NCBI RefSeq assembly: GCF_016432865.1
Contig: NC_067401.1
Span: forward strand, 283,154,001 to 283,218,000
Length of the DNA: 64,000 nt
From: Antechinus flavipes
Taxonomy: Eukaryota
Direction: 5' to 3'
Part shown: positions 41,400 to 62,177 of the stretch, piece by piece
Layout: the number at the start of each line of letters is the position of its first letter
Numbering within the stretch: position 1 is the first letter of the stretch
Made by a program: the position numbers and the translations under genes
The notes under the pieces: generated by a model
What the model saw: the letters and a program-made list of their open reading frames with translations, nothing else
Databases searched by the model: none
What the model was told of the DNA's origin: nothing

Positions 41400-41886
41400 A
41401 ACTCTTTCACTTTGAGGTTAAGTGTGTTTCGAGGGGAAGTAAGAAAGTTCCAAGTGAATGGTGAACTTCACATGTAATAAGAGGAAAACCTATAAAGCCT
41501 GAACTATTTGGAAAGGGGGGGGGGGAATCCCTCTTTTCGGGCTCGTTCGGATTGGCTTTTGACTGAATTTATACAGGTAGCTCCACCCCCTTAGCTTATT
41601 GAGTAAATGCTCAGTCTGTTTGGTTAAGCAGACAAAGTGCTGTAACACTCAGCCCTCCAGTGTTTCGGCGAGGCAAAAGCACTAAGTGCCGCAGCACCTG
41701 TCTGACAGACACGGAGAGAAAGACAGAGAAAGAGAAGAGAAAAAGAGGCTTGCGGGGGGTGGTGGCGTCGGAGAGACCGTAGAAAAAGGAGTTAACTCTG
41801 GAGGTGTGAGTCAGTTTTTCTCTAAGCCGGCAATTGGAAGGACGAAGAAATGTTTACTGTGTAGAAATGAGTGTGACTTACCTTAG
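41400..41886 (+). promoter_or_regulatory. PRDM1: PRDM1 main (alpha) promoter and 5'UTR; TSS probably ~41615-41630
   Basis: Locally CpG-enriched; ATTGG (CCAAT box) near 41551; CAGACAAAGTGCTGTAACACTCAGCCCTCCAGTGTT resembles the start of human PRDM1 mRNA as recalled; lies directly upstream of coding exon 1. Confidence 0.75.
41522..41531 (+). promoter_or_regulatory. NF-kB site GGGGAATCCC
   Basis: Perfect GGGRNWYYCC match ~100 bp upstream of the inferred TSS; NF-kB-dependent induction from the mouse Prdm1 first-exon region is established. Confidence 0.7.
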
Positions 41887-41928
41887 ATGTTGGATTTTTA
41901 TTTGGAAAAACTTGTGGATACGACTTTG
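41887..41928 (+). CDS. PRDM1: PRDM1 coding exon 1 (MLDFYLEKLVDTTL)
   Basis: 42 nt followed by donor GTAAGA; matches human MLDICLEKRVGTTL (10/14 as recalled); phase 0 with exon 2. Confidence 0.85.
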
Positions 41929-43679
41929 GTAAGAAATTTTTGATTCTATTTCTTTTCTCTTGAGTTGTTTAAACTTTTTTTTTCTCCCTGCTTAACCAAC
42001 ATAGTAGCAGTTGCAAGCAAGTAATACTTTTGCCTTGGTGCACTCAGGACTTCAAACATGTTTATTATAAGACCTTTTCTCTGCTCCTTATGAATCATTA
42101 ACCCTTTCAGTTCTGAGTGCAATTGTCAATTCATTGAAGTTTCAGTCTCAGTTCTTCTCCCCCCTCCCCATAAGATCAAAGAAGAGCAAATATTCGGTGG
42201 TGGCTTAATTTTAAAACCTTTATTATTAGTTAATATTTATTTAGCATCATGACTGTACATGCTGGTAAAAGCCACCCATAGACAGGTCTGTCTAAATTTT
42301 GAACAGTGTAAGACATATGTCCCAGGTTCTTCAATTTGGATGCTCCAGCTCCCCCCCTCCCCCGCCCCCATTAATTATGGCTAAATGAAAGAAGATAAAG
42401 TCTACTTTTAACATCTTCCTTGGGACATTATCTTATTTTGAAAATCAAGTGAGTATTCTCCTTTCATGTATAGAGATTCTTTGTTAAAATTACGAAGTAT
42501 GATTTTTAACAGAAGAGTGTTTGAGACACTTTTTTCTTTTTGTCATCTAGTTTTTGTGTAATAGTATGAGAGAGGGTAACTTTTTTGGGGGGAAGAAAAT
42601 AGAGAACTACTTCTCTCTTATTTGGAAGGCAAATGTTATTACTAATCTAGAGGATAAGGCAGGTTTGGGGAAAGTAGCCCATCACTAGTTGAGGAAGGGC
42701 TTACTTACTCTCTCACTTTTCTATATTTACTATAACTTTCATTATAGTAAATTGAAACACTTATGATTTCTGAAAACGGAATGAATGGTCAAAATTTTCA
42801 ACAGAAAGTACTATTTGTAACCCAGGTGGCTGAAAGGAATTTTCTCCAGGGATATTTACTATTGGACAGTTTTGCATTTTTTGTTGTGCCTTTTCATGAT
42901 GGCGTGAGATGCCAACAAATCACAGAAACCCCATTTTTTCTTCTGTTTTGGTCCAAATGAGTGCACTCCAATGATTTGTGACTAGCTCTACCAGGATGCT
43001 GGCCAAGATGCAGCCTTTTGCTCTCTTCCTTGCCTAGAGGATGAAAGAAAGCAAAGCAGAAGGGGGAGGATAAATAGGGGTGGGGGGGCAGGTTGTTTTG
43101 AAAGTTGTTTGTGCTTTGGAAGCTGGTGGGAAAGTTCAGTCTTCCCCATTTGGAAAAGGCAGGCTGGGTTCCGCTCCTGCAACACACGCGCTTTCCATTT
43201 TTAGCTTCATTCAGACGCAGACAGCAGCTCCTTCCTCTTCCTCTCCTTGTTTATGACACTTTTTTTTTTCTCTGAGGCAGCTTTTCCACAGGCACTGAGT
43301 GGTCTGGTGGCCATGACCCCAGGTTTTCTTGGATACGAGATTGGGAACCCAGAAAGTGGGTTCCGTGCTTTTGAGAGGTAAAGCCAGAAATAGATCTCTG
43401 AGCTGATTTGTTTTGATTTTTTTTTTCCTCAGCGAGTCTGCCTCACTTTGCTTTTTTGTTTTTTGTTTTTTTAAACTAAGCTTAGCATTTGAAAACCTTG
43501 CTCCATTCAGCCCGGGCAATCTCGTTTATACTGCTCTTTTTGGCTGTTACTCAACTGTACCAGCTCTTCTGCATAGGCTTTTCAAGTGCCACAGACTACT
43601 GTATTAGTCACAGTGTCTCAGAGGAAACCACAGAAACTGCAGGACAATGGGGATTAAAGGCTTTTTCCTTCTTTTCCAG

Positions 43680-43928
43680 GCTGCCACCCAGTGTAGCTCC
43701 GACACCGTAAATTTTCCGACCTTGGTAGAGGGGGCAGAGGGAACCATGAAAATGGACATGGAAGATGCTGACATGACTCTGTGGACAGAGGCAGATTTTG
43801 AAGAAAAGTGCACATACATTGTGAATGACCATCCTTGGGACTCTGGTGCTGACGGAGGAGCTTCCATTCAGGCGGAGGCATCTTTGCCAAGGAATCTGGT
43901 TTTCAAATTTGCAACGAACTGCAAAGAG
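43680..43928 (+). CDS. PRDM1: PRDM1 exon 2 (AATQC...[22 protein letters not shown]...ATNCKE)
   Basis: TTTTCCAG acceptor, GTAAGC donor, 249 nt; contains the diagnostic [16 protein letters not shown] motif (ATG at 43746) and the start of the PR domain. Confidence 0.97.
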
Positions 43929-61092: not shown

Positions 61093-62177
61093 CCCAAACA
61101 CACATCAGTCCAAAGCAACAAAGCACTGAGAAAAATGAACTTTGTCCCAAAAGTGTCCCAAAGAGAGAGCATAGTGTGAAAGAAATTCTGAAAACTGATT
61201 CCAGCCATTCAAAAGCAAAGAGCTTCTTCCATCCTAACATTTCACCCATCACTCCAGAAAAGGACATGGATGACTTCAGGAAAAACTGCAGTCCTGAAAG
61301 GCCTATATGCCCTCGTGTTATCTACCCAATCCGAGTTCCCAATGCAGAAGACTTGTTGAAAGCTTCTCTGACCTATCGGATGGAGAGACCTACTTACATC
61401 ACTCACTCCCCCATCCCATCATCTACCACTCCTAGCCCTTCAGCAATAAGCAGCCCAGACCAAAGCTTGAAAAGCTCCAGCCCTCATGGTAGCTTGGGAG
61501 ACACAGTTTCACCTTTGGCTCCCATTTCTCAAGAACATCGAGAATCTTACCCTTACTTGAATACACACTATGGCACAGAAGGACTGGGGTCTTACCCTGG
61601 CTATCTACCACCCAGTCATCTTCCTCCAGCTTTCTTCCCTTCTTATAATACTCATTATCCCAAGTTACTTTTACCTCCATATGGTATGAGCTGTAATAGC
61701 CTGAGTACTGTGAACAACATAAATGGCATCAATAACTTCAATCTCTTCCCAAGGTTATATCCAGTCTATGGTAACTTGCCTCATCCCATGTTCAACTCGG
61801 CTACTCTTCCAAATTCATTGCCCTCCGAAGGATCCCGGAGATTGTTGCAACCAGAGCACCCCAGAGATGTTCTTGTACCTGCACCCCATAGTGCCTTTTC
61901 TATCACCAGCGCAGCCACCAGCATGAAAGACAAGCCATGTAGTCCAACGAGTGGGTCCCCAACTGCTGGGGACACATCTGAACATATGATACAACCTAAA
62001 GCTACCTCAACAATATTGGCTGCCAACAGCAGTGAAGAAGCCATAAATCTCATTAAAAGTAAAAGAAATATGACTGGTTACAAAACACTTCCATATCCAC
62101 TGAAGAAACAGAATGGAAAAATTAAGTACGAGTGTAATGTTTGTTCCAAGACTTTTGGGCAGCTCTCAAATCTGAAG
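61093..62177 (+). CDS. PRDM1: PRDM1 exon 5 (Pro/Ser-rich repression region to first zinc finger ...[17 protein letters not shown])
   Basis: TATTTCAG acceptor, GTAGGT donor, 1085 nt, phase-compatible with exons 4 and 6; contains [19 protein letters not shown]. Confidence 0.97.

What the first reader, a model, noticed from the sequence alone, without database searches (positions are those of the whole stretch)
43441..43607. Hidden homolog of the extra mouse Prdm1 coding exon inside intron 1
A branch-point-like CTCAC (A43445), a long U-tract and AAG at 43478-43480 form an acceptor. Joining exon 1 (uORF2 frame, ending TG) to C43481 gives C-LAFENLAPFSPGNLVYTALFGCYSTVP, which aligns with the mouse insert C-QRLHFKTVLLQGSLLYTALDSYSTVQ as recalled (GNLVYTAL/GSLLYTAL, YSTVP/YSTVQ). 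An exon ending at 43556 (weak GTACCA donor) or 43562 (non-canonical GC) would shift uORF2 into the main frame and give an N-terminally extended, mouse-like protein. Without a donor, the frame stops at TAG 43605-43607. So this is a weakly used cassette exon, a vestigial exon, or a conserved element that mouse exonised. In each case the supposedly mouse-specific N-terminus may have therian-age roots.
Basis: partly seen in the sequence, partly recalled or inferred. Interest (0 to 1): 0.78.

Follow-up and report, generated by a model that had tools for sequence, protein, structure and literature searches.

The report
Unspliced marsupial counterpart of rodent Prdm1 exon 2
This stretch of a marsupial PRDM1 intron really is the DNA counterpart of the extra coding exon of mouse-like rodents, but here it lacks the rodent splice sites and a conserved reading frame, so it is an ancient conserved non-coding element that rodents later turned into an exon.

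Summary
The homology is real: window 43476-43562 aligns end to end with the 79-nt exon 2 of Peromyscus and rat Prdm1.

It is not a hidden coding exon.
- At the rodent acceptor CAG the window has AAA.
- At the rodent donor GT it has GC, as do all nine non-eumuroid mammals sampled (the window, three other marsupials, echidna, four eutherians).
- In the rodent phase it opens with TAA and TAG.
- Its length is 87 nt, which does not restore the frame.
- That frame is not kept in other marsupials. Wombat and wallaby carry +1/-1 indels that change the middle of the peptide. Bilby loses the frame.

The 11/17 amino-acid match is a by-product of nucleotide conservation. Window 43485-43679 is a conserved non-coding block, 81% identical to a bird over 316 nt (43485-43800). 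It is better conserved than the adjoining coding sequence. The block holds an 11-bp RNA helix (43485-43495 with 43579-43589) with two independent compensatory changes.

Best reading: muroid rodents exonised an amniote-age element. Current splicing in this marsupial could not be tested because no RNA data were available. Interest is modest.

The parts
41867..41928 (+). 3' end of PRDM1 exon 1. Alternative-frame ATG at 41867 (MSVTYLRCWIFIWKNLWIRL + TG), main ATG at 41887 (MLDFYLEKLVDTTL), donor GT at 41929.
   Evidence: The alternative-frame ATG and peptide are shared with rodents, mole, golden mole, echidna and the other marsupials.
43442..43480 (+).
   Evidence: This AAG lies 5 nt downstream of the position of the rodent acceptor. 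A second AG (TAG, 43483-43485) follows 5 nt later.
43476..43562 (+). DNA orthologue of muroid Prdm1 exon 2: 87 nt here, 79 nt in Peromyscus and rat.
   Evidence: Alignments A1-A4 and the rodent-phase table.
43473..43475 (+). AAA where Peromyscus and rat have the acceptor CAG.
43477..43485 (+). TAA (43477-43479) and TAG (43483-43485), both in frame in the rodent phase.
   Evidence: The three other marsupials and porcupine carry both stops; golden mole keeps the second and mole the first. Nannospalax, Peromyscus and rat have CAA and TTG.
43481..43562 (+).
43563..43564 (+). GC at the position of the rodent GT donor.
   Evidence: GC in echidna, the marsupials and the non-eumuroid eutherians, CT in the bird, GT only in Peromyscus and rat.
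43485..43679 (+). Amniote-wide conserved non-coding block. It covers the 3' part of the exon-2 orthologue and everything up to the exon 2 acceptor.
   Evidence: Bird 81% over 316 nt, 43485-43800.
43485..43495 (+). 5' arm of the conserved RNA helix (GCATTTGAAAA).
43579..43589 (+). 3' arm of the conserved RNA helix (TTTTCAAGTGC).
43605..43607 (+).
43680..43928 (+). Next coding exon (AATQCSS...[10 protein letters not shown]...), acceptor CAG at 43677-43679. The 3' end is inferred from where the frame leaves the PRDM1 sequence.
   Evidence: The N-terminus is identical to P0126/P0136.

Best explanation
Window 43476-43562 is the true orthologue of the 79-nt exon 2 of muroid rodent Prdm1. That exon puts the upstream alternative-frame ATG of exon 1 into the main frame and gives mouse-like Blimp-1 its longer N-terminus. 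In this marsupial the stretch is not an exon. It is the 5' edge of a roughly 195-nt non-coding block (43485-43679) conserved across amniotes, lying in intron 1 just upstream of the exon 2 acceptor.

The peptide resemblance arises because the conserved DNA happens, in this species, to lie in the rodent frame over its last ~50 nt.

The exon was made in the muroid lineage.
- The TAA>CAA and TAG>TTG changes are already present in Nannospalax.
- The CAG acceptor, the 79-nt length and the GC>GT donor are seen only in cricetids and murids.

Inferred, not shown: the block acts at RNA level. An 11-bp helix pairs 43485-43495 with 43579-43589 and loops out the most conserved core. In rodents that loop holds the weak exon 2 donor. 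The element may therefore tune processing of the 5' end of PRDM1 pre-mRNA.
For: Species and gene: the window is marsupial PRDM1 (best hit wallaby, 90%).

Orthology:
- Peromyscus aligns at 83% column identity over ~720 nt.
- The Peromyscus and rat exon 2 boundaries were found from tool-derived proteins.

Not an exon here:
- Acceptor AAA against CAG, donor GC against GT, length 87 (0 mod 3).
- Stops TAA and TAG in the rodent phase.
- GC at the donor is shared by all four marsupials, echidna, golden mole, mole, porcupine and Nannospalax.

No frame conservation: wombat and wallaby read a different middle peptide because of +1/-1 indels. Bilby is 74 nt (2 mod 3).

Conservation is nucleotide-level and extends beyond the 'exon':
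- Cassette 5' part: 40-47% to the eutherians and echidna.
- Cassette 3' part: 70-89%.
- Downstream intron 43563-43679: 74-79%, and 99-100% among marsupials.
- Adjoining coding exon: 63-72%.
- Bird: 81% over 316 nt.

Helix:
- 93-94% of cells paired, against 20-60% when the partner is slid by 1-3 columns.
- Compensatory UA>GC in the marsupials and AU>CG in Nannospalax; U.G/C.G variation.
- It is present in the window's minimum-energy fold, z -2.0.

Donor log-odds (approximate matrix): real donors of this gene 6.6-7.4 bits, rodent exon 2 donor 0.6, window GTACCA -2.3, window GC -11.

Annotation: none of the window-genome or other marsupial isoforms seen carries the insert.
Against: - No RNA data could be consulted, so low-level splicing from the AAG acceptor (43480) to the GTACCA donor (43557) cannot be excluded.
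- The rodent donor that is actually used is itself weak (0.6 bits), so weakness alone does not rule out use.
- Only 12 species were compared. Monodelphis and mouse itself could not be fetched.
- The helix rests on two compensatory events, is A/U-rich, and is built on a partly palindromic motif.
- The block could instead, or also, be a DNA-level promoter-proximal element, or part of a longer 5' exon as annotated in birds.
Confidence: 0.78

Rival explanations
1. Weakly used cassette exon. In this marsupial the AAG acceptor at 43478-43480 and the GTACCA donor at 43557 (or the GC at 43563) are used at a low level. This would give an N-terminally extended PRDM1 translated from the ATG at 41867.
For: - The frame is open and the length is 1 mod 3 in the window, wombat and wallaby.
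- A long pyrimidine tract precedes the AAG.
- The alternative-frame ATG is conserved.
- The rodent donor that is really used is also poor.
Against: - The donors score -2.3 and -11 bits, against 6.6-7.4 for the real donors of this gene.
- AAG is a disfavoured acceptor, and a competing TAG follows 5 nt later.
- The peptide is not conserved among marsupials, and bilby loses the frame.
- No annotated marsupial isoform seen carries it.
Confidence: 0.08
2. Vestigial exon. A therian or older ancestor had a coding exon here; muroid rodents kept it and other lineages lost it.
For: - The DNA is conserved very deeply.
- The alternative-frame ATG of exon 1 is conserved from echidna to rodents.
- The bird has no stop in the rodent phase.
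Against: - GC (CT in the bird) at the donor position and TAA/TAG in the rodent phase are shared by marsupials, an afrotherian, a laurasiatherian and a hystricomorph rodent. This makes them the ancestral state by parsimony.
- Segment lengths differ by non-multiples of three in nearly every lineage.
- Conservation continues unbroken into the downstream intron and is higher there. That is not the pattern of a decayed exon.
Confidence: 0.05
3. The conserved block works at DNA level, or as part of a longer 5' exon, and not as an intronic RNA structure. It could be a promoter-proximal or enhancer element of the internal promoter at about 43080-43380. It could also be the 5' UTR of transcripts that start inside intron 1 and use the ATG at 43647.
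For: - The neighbouring block 43082-43330 is 86% identical to the bird, and many predicted eutherian isoforms start there.
- Bird and some rodent models start at the MRIKG/MGIKG ATG, inside the block and in frame.
Against: - The ATG is lost in porcupine, and an extra T puts it out of frame in echidna.
- Compensatory and wobble changes in the helix point to pairing on the + strand RNA.

The two readings do not exclude each other, and neither revives the hidden-exon claim.
Confidence: 0.3
4. Chance resemblance between an arbitrary intronic ORF and the mouse peptide.
For: The protein match is short (17 residues, 20 bits), and T-rich introns yield many short ORFs.
Against: The DNA is collinear and aligned with the rodent exon and both its flanks, with E-values from 1e-62 to 1e-154 across species.
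Confidence: 0.01

Closest known systems
Exon 2 of muroid rodent Prdm1/Blimp-1 (79-nt cassette; N-terminus MSE.YLRCWIF...QGLHFK.VLLQGSLLYTALDSYSTVQ)
   Same: Orthologous DNA in the same place, between exon 1 and the MKMDMED exon. The last ~47 nt are 76% identical to Peromyscus. There are 11/17 identical residues in the shared frame. The same RNA helix arms are present.
   Different: - No AG at the rodent acceptor position and GC instead of GT at the donor.
- 87 nt instead of 79.
- Two stops in the rodent phase.
Conserved non-coding elements in and around developmental transcription-factor genes
   Same: Conserved from bird to marsupial at ~80% with no conserved reading frame. It is more conserved than the neighbouring coding sequence. 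It lies in the 5' part of a developmental regulator gene.
   Different: It is short (~195 nt), it is not ultraconserved, and it carries signs of an RNA helix rather than only a DNA-level signal.
Lineage-specific exonisation of intronic sequence by creation of splice sites (as known for Alu and other intronic sequences)
   Same: In rodents, a point change at +2 of the donor (C to T), a new AG and the loss of stops turned intronic sequence into an alternative coding exon. Both rat forms exist (P0154 without the exon, P0157 with it).
   Different: The source is an ancient constrained element and not a transposable element. Here we are looking at the non-exonised state.
GC-AG introns
   Different: From general knowledge, GC donors that function have near-perfect consensus at the other positions. 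CCA|GCTCTT matches almost none of them (-11 bits).

Membership tests
Functional orthologue of muroid Prdm1 exon 2 | AG acceptor at the orthologous position | tested here: not met
   Window AAA at 43473-43475, against CAG in Peromyscus and rat.
Functional orthologue of muroid Prdm1 exon 2 | GT donor at the orthologous position | tested here: not met
   Window GC at 43563-43564. GT only in Peromyscus and rat.
Functional orthologue of muroid Prdm1 exon 2 | Length 1 mod 3 between the orthologous boundaries, with an open frame in the rodent phase | tested here: not met
   87 nt (0 mod 3); TAA at 43477-43479 and TAG at 43483-43485.
Functional orthologue of muroid Prdm1 exon 2 | Sequence homology to the rodent exon | tested here: met
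   End-to-end DNA alignment. BLASTP 11/17 identities.
Coding cassette exon (any boundaries) in marsupials | Reading frame and peptide conserved among related species | tested here: not met
   Wombat and wallaby have +1/-1 indels that change the middle 12-13 residues. Bilby is 74 nt, 2 mod 3.
Coding cassette exon (any boundaries) in marsupials | Splice junctions seen in RNA | not testable with these tools
   No RNA-seq access. The annotated isoforms seen lack it, but only 15 of the 39 cluster members were listed.
Conserved non-coding element | Conservation far above the intronic background over deep divergence, without frame conservation | tested here: met
   Most of the rest of intron 1 (41930-43070) aligns only in patches outside marsupials. 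Downstream intron 43563-43679 is 74-79% identical to echidna and the eutherians. Bird is 81% over 43485-43800. Indels are not multiples of three.
Structured RNA element | Helix kept by compensatory changes | tested here: met
   Two independent double changes plus U.G/C.G variation. 94% of cells paired, against at most 60% in the slid controls. Only two events, so support is moderate.
Structured RNA element | Folding energy clearly below shuffled sequence, or membership of a described family | tested here: inconclusive
   z -2.0, with 8 of 200 shuffles as good. No Rfam match at E<=1.

The most novel reading that the evidence does not exclude
The amniote-wide block 43485-43679 is a structured pre-mRNA switch. 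Its helix (43485-43495 with 43579-43589) encloses a latent donor. It controls how the 5' end of PRDM1 is processed and hence which N-terminal isoform or uORF configuration is made. Muroid rodents co-opted this switch into a regulated coding cassette. In this marsupial it may allow rare use of the AAG...GTACCA cassette.
Probability: 0.12. Interest if true: 0.6.

Novelty: new member of a known kind. Interest (0 to 1): 0.33.

Why it matters
Mouse Blimp-1 is the standard model for PRDM1 biology, and its N-terminus differs from that of most mammals. The data show where that difference comes from. It is a muroid-specific exonisation of an amniote-age non-coding element. The exon joins a widely conserved upstream alternative-frame ATG to the main frame.

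This is a caution against reading peptide similarity inside conserved introns as hidden coding sequence. It also points to a small conserved RNA helix next to the exon 2 acceptor. That helix could be tested for a role in PRDM1 5'-end processing.

The work does not reveal a new marsupial protein isoform.

Tried and rejected
- Word search with the Peromyscus N-terminus (P0089, residues 1-47) returned only itself. Only cluster representatives are searched, so this says nothing about which species carry the extension.
- The Monodelphis locus (P0131) was not on record, so there is no American marsupial in the comparison.
- The canonical mouse protein was not among the listed cluster members. Rat, Apodemus and six cricetids stand in for it.
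- Morgan 2009 and Tunyaplin 2000, the papers on mouse Prdm1 exon structure, are not held. Literature searches gave only indirect mentions of exons 1A and 1B.
- Rfam gave no match.
- A consensus fold of the whole block gave little beyond the one long-range helix; the other predicted stems never vary.
- Chance similarity was rejected (see rival explanations).
- Not done: the third word search, the large HMMER search, and structure or complex prediction. None bears on a 27-residue non-conserved peptide.
- Not done: any joined exon 1 + cassette + exon 2 protein. None was built for a search. Exons were handled separately by reference, and the two carried-over bases were added only for in-script translation.
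- Human: no human contig was fetched. Human proteins that turned up in clusters (P0027, P0156, P0158, and the P0019 cluster) were not read or compared.

Full report
WHAT THE WINDOW IS

The large ORF at 60912-62453 matches PRDM1 proteins. The best hit is tammar wallaby at 90% identity, with eutherians at 70-80%. The window is therefore the PRDM1 gene of an Australian-type marsupial. Over intron 1 it is closest to wombat: 90% over 2 kb, against 88% for wallaby and 86% for bilby.

Exon 1 ends at 41928.
- The main ATG at 41887 gives MLDFYLEKLVDTTL.
- An alternative-frame ATG at 41867 gives MSVTYLRCWIFIWKNLWIRL plus a split TG.

The next coding exon starts at 43680 with AATQCSS...[10 protein letters not shown]. 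This N-terminus is identical to the annotated proteins of the window's own genome, P0126 and P0136.

CHECK OF THE OBSERVATION

- CTCAC lies at 43442-43446, a T-tract runs to 43472, and AAG lies at 43478-43480.
- TG + 43481 onward reads C-LAFENLAPFSPGNLVYTALFGCYSTVP, and the frame stops at TAG 43605-43607.
- An exon ending at 43556 would be 76 nt and one ending at 43562 would be 82 nt. Both are 1 mod 3.

The comparator was obtained from tools, not from memory. Peromyscus isoform X4 (P0089), rat (P0157), Apodemus, Cricetulus, Mesocricetus, Arvicola, Microtus and Phodopus all start with MS..YLRCWIF.WK..WVRPC. This is followed by QGLHFK..LLQGSLLYTALDSYSTVQ and then AAPK.... BLASTP of the window peptide against P0089 gives 11/17 identities (GNLVYTALFGCYSTVPA against GSLLYTAL-DSYSTVQA), 20 bits, E 3e-4 for the single comparison. 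The first 11 residues do not align.

THE HOMOLOGY IS REAL, AT DNA LEVEL

I fetched the genomic loci of Peromyscus, rat, Nannospalax, porcupine, mole, golden mole, echidna, wallaby, wombat, bilby and a passerine bird. In Peromyscus and rat, exon 2 is 79 nt, with acceptor ...tttcag|C and donor CAA|gtactc. The window aligns with Peromyscus at 83% column identity over about 720 nt. The rodent exon corresponds to window 43476-43562, with indels of +5 and +3 nt. Chance resemblance is therefore excluded.

WHY IT IS NOT AN EXON HERE

Reading each species between the rodent exon boundaries gave the following.
- The window has AAA where rodents have the acceptor CAG.
- The window has GC where rodents have the donor GT.
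- The segment is 87 nt, which is 0 mod 3.
- In the rodent phase it starts C-TAA-GCT-TAG, two stops.

The three other marsupials and porcupine carry both stops; golden mole keeps the second and mole the first. GC at the donor position is found in echidna, all four marsupials, golden mole, mole, porcupine and Nannospalax. The bird has CT, and only Peromyscus and rat have GT. By parsimony the non-exon state is ancestral.

This happens to offset the 5-nt insertion, so only the last two thirds of the peptide are in the rodent frame.

That frame is not conserved among marsupials.
- Wombat and wallaby have one more C at AAAACC(C) and one fewer T in the T-run. Their middle residues are quite different (PSSIQFGQSRLYSS and PCSIPSGQSRFCCS).
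- Bilby has an 8-nt deletion and ends at 74 nt, 2 mod 3.

The window's state is probably derived, because the T-run length is shared by wombat, wallaby and bilby and the extra C by wombat and wallaby.

With an approximate textbook donor matrix entered from memory, the scores are:
- the gene's real donors, 7.4 and 6.6 bits;
- the rodent exon 2 donor, 0.6 bits;
- the window's ACT|GTACCA, -2.3 bits;
- the window's CCA|GCTCTT, -11 bits.

None of the marsupial isoforms listed, including four encoded by the window's genome, carries an insert.

WHAT IT IS INSTEAD

Identity to the window, by segment:
- cassette 5' part (43476-43515): 40-47% to echidna and the eutherians;
- cassette 3' part (43516-43562): 70-89%;
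- downstream intron (43563-43679): 74-79%, and 99-100% among marsupials;
- first 66 nt of the coding exon: 63-72%, and 95-98% among marsupials.

The bird aligns from 43485 to 43800 at 81% over 316 nt. A second block, 43082-43330, aligns at 86%. Most of the rest of intron 1 aligns only in patches outside marsupials. The 'mouse-like' codons are therefore the 5' edge of an amniote-age non-coding block that runs on to the exon 2 acceptor. Single-base indels occur within it.

A CONSERVED HELIX

RNAalifold proposed a long-range stem. In window coordinates it pairs 43485-43495 (GCATTTGAAAA) with 43579-43589 (TTTTCAAGTGC). On the 11- and 12-species alignments:
- 93-94% of cells form standard pairs, against 20-60% when the partner is slid by 1-3 columns;
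- one pair changed U-A to G-C in the marsupials, and the neighbouring pair changed A-U to C-G in Nannospalax;
- a U.G pair is C-G in mole and golden mole.

The window's own minimum-energy fold contains the stem, extended to about 17 pairs. Its energy is -30.5 kcal/mol with z -2.0. Rfam has nothing here.

In rodents the 5' arm lies inside exon 2 and the 3' arm about 16-17 nt into intron 2, so the weak donor sits in the loop. That this helix regulates splicing or 5'-end processing is my inference and is not shown.

HOW THE RODENT EXON AROSE (descriptive)

Nannospalax already shares CAA and TTG in place of the two stops. It still has CAA at the acceptor, GC at the donor and a length that does not restore the frame. 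It has also lost the alternative-frame ATG of exon 1, which is now CTG followed by a stop. Cricetids and murids have all the enabling features.

Rat has both forms in the databases: P0154 without the exon and P0157 with it. So the exon is an alternative cassette even in rodents.

LIMITS

- No RNA data were available, so rare use of the cassette in this species cannot be excluded.
- The comparison covers 12 species, without Monodelphis or mouse itself.
- The donor matrix is approximate.
- The key papers on mouse exon structure were not held.

VERDICT

Interest is modest.

Noticed in passing
window 43077-43377 (ATG 43313, donor GT 43378): A second deeply conserved block, 86% identical to the bird over 254 nt. 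It corresponds to the alternative first exon from which many predicted eutherian isoforms start (MTPG...CSE|AAPK; mouse NP_001392860.1 = P0159, rabbit, pig, bats, marmoset). In this marsupial the MTPG frame stops at TAA 43379-43381. Here it can therefore only be a non-coding first exon or a uORF.
   Followed up: partly
window 43647-43679: ATG in a good context (ACAATGG), giving [11 protein letters not shown] in frame with the coding exon at 43680. Bird models start at the same place (MRIKGCFLFFQ, P0037), as do some rodent models (P0141, P0022). The ATG is GTG in porcupine, and an extra T puts it out of frame in echidna.
   Followed up: partly
window 41867-41928 and exon 1 of L001-L009, L011: The alternative-frame ATG 20 nt upstream of the main ATG, and its peptide (..YLRCWIF.WKN.W.R.), are kept from echidna to rodents. 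Outside muroids it would be a uORF overlapping the main start and ending in the next exon. It is lost in Nannospalax (CTG plus a stop) and in porcupine (ACG). Camel and bat gene models (P0075, P0007) translate this frame.
   Followed up: partly
window 43485-43495 with 43579-43589: A conserved long-range RNA helix with two independent compensatory changes. It encloses the most conserved core of the block (TTTTGGCT.TTACTCAACTGTACC).
   Followed up: yes
window about 61900-62100 (large exon): The window's PRDM1 lacks 7 residues (NILSGGG-like) and 2 residues (TA) that wallaby, wombat and bilby have. This fits the 816-817-aa proteins P0126/P0136 of the window's genome, against 826 aa in the others.
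   Followed up: partly
L005 (Talpa) whole locus, minus strand: An ATG5 gene model is annotated on the opposite strand across the whole mole PRDM1 locus. It is probably a long read-through or mis-joined model.
   Followed up: no
L001 2915-2975 (Peromyscus intron 1): A (TA)n microsatellite of about 60 nt sits directly upstream of the pyrimidine tract of exon 2 in Peromyscus. It is absent from rat and all the other species.
   Followed up: no
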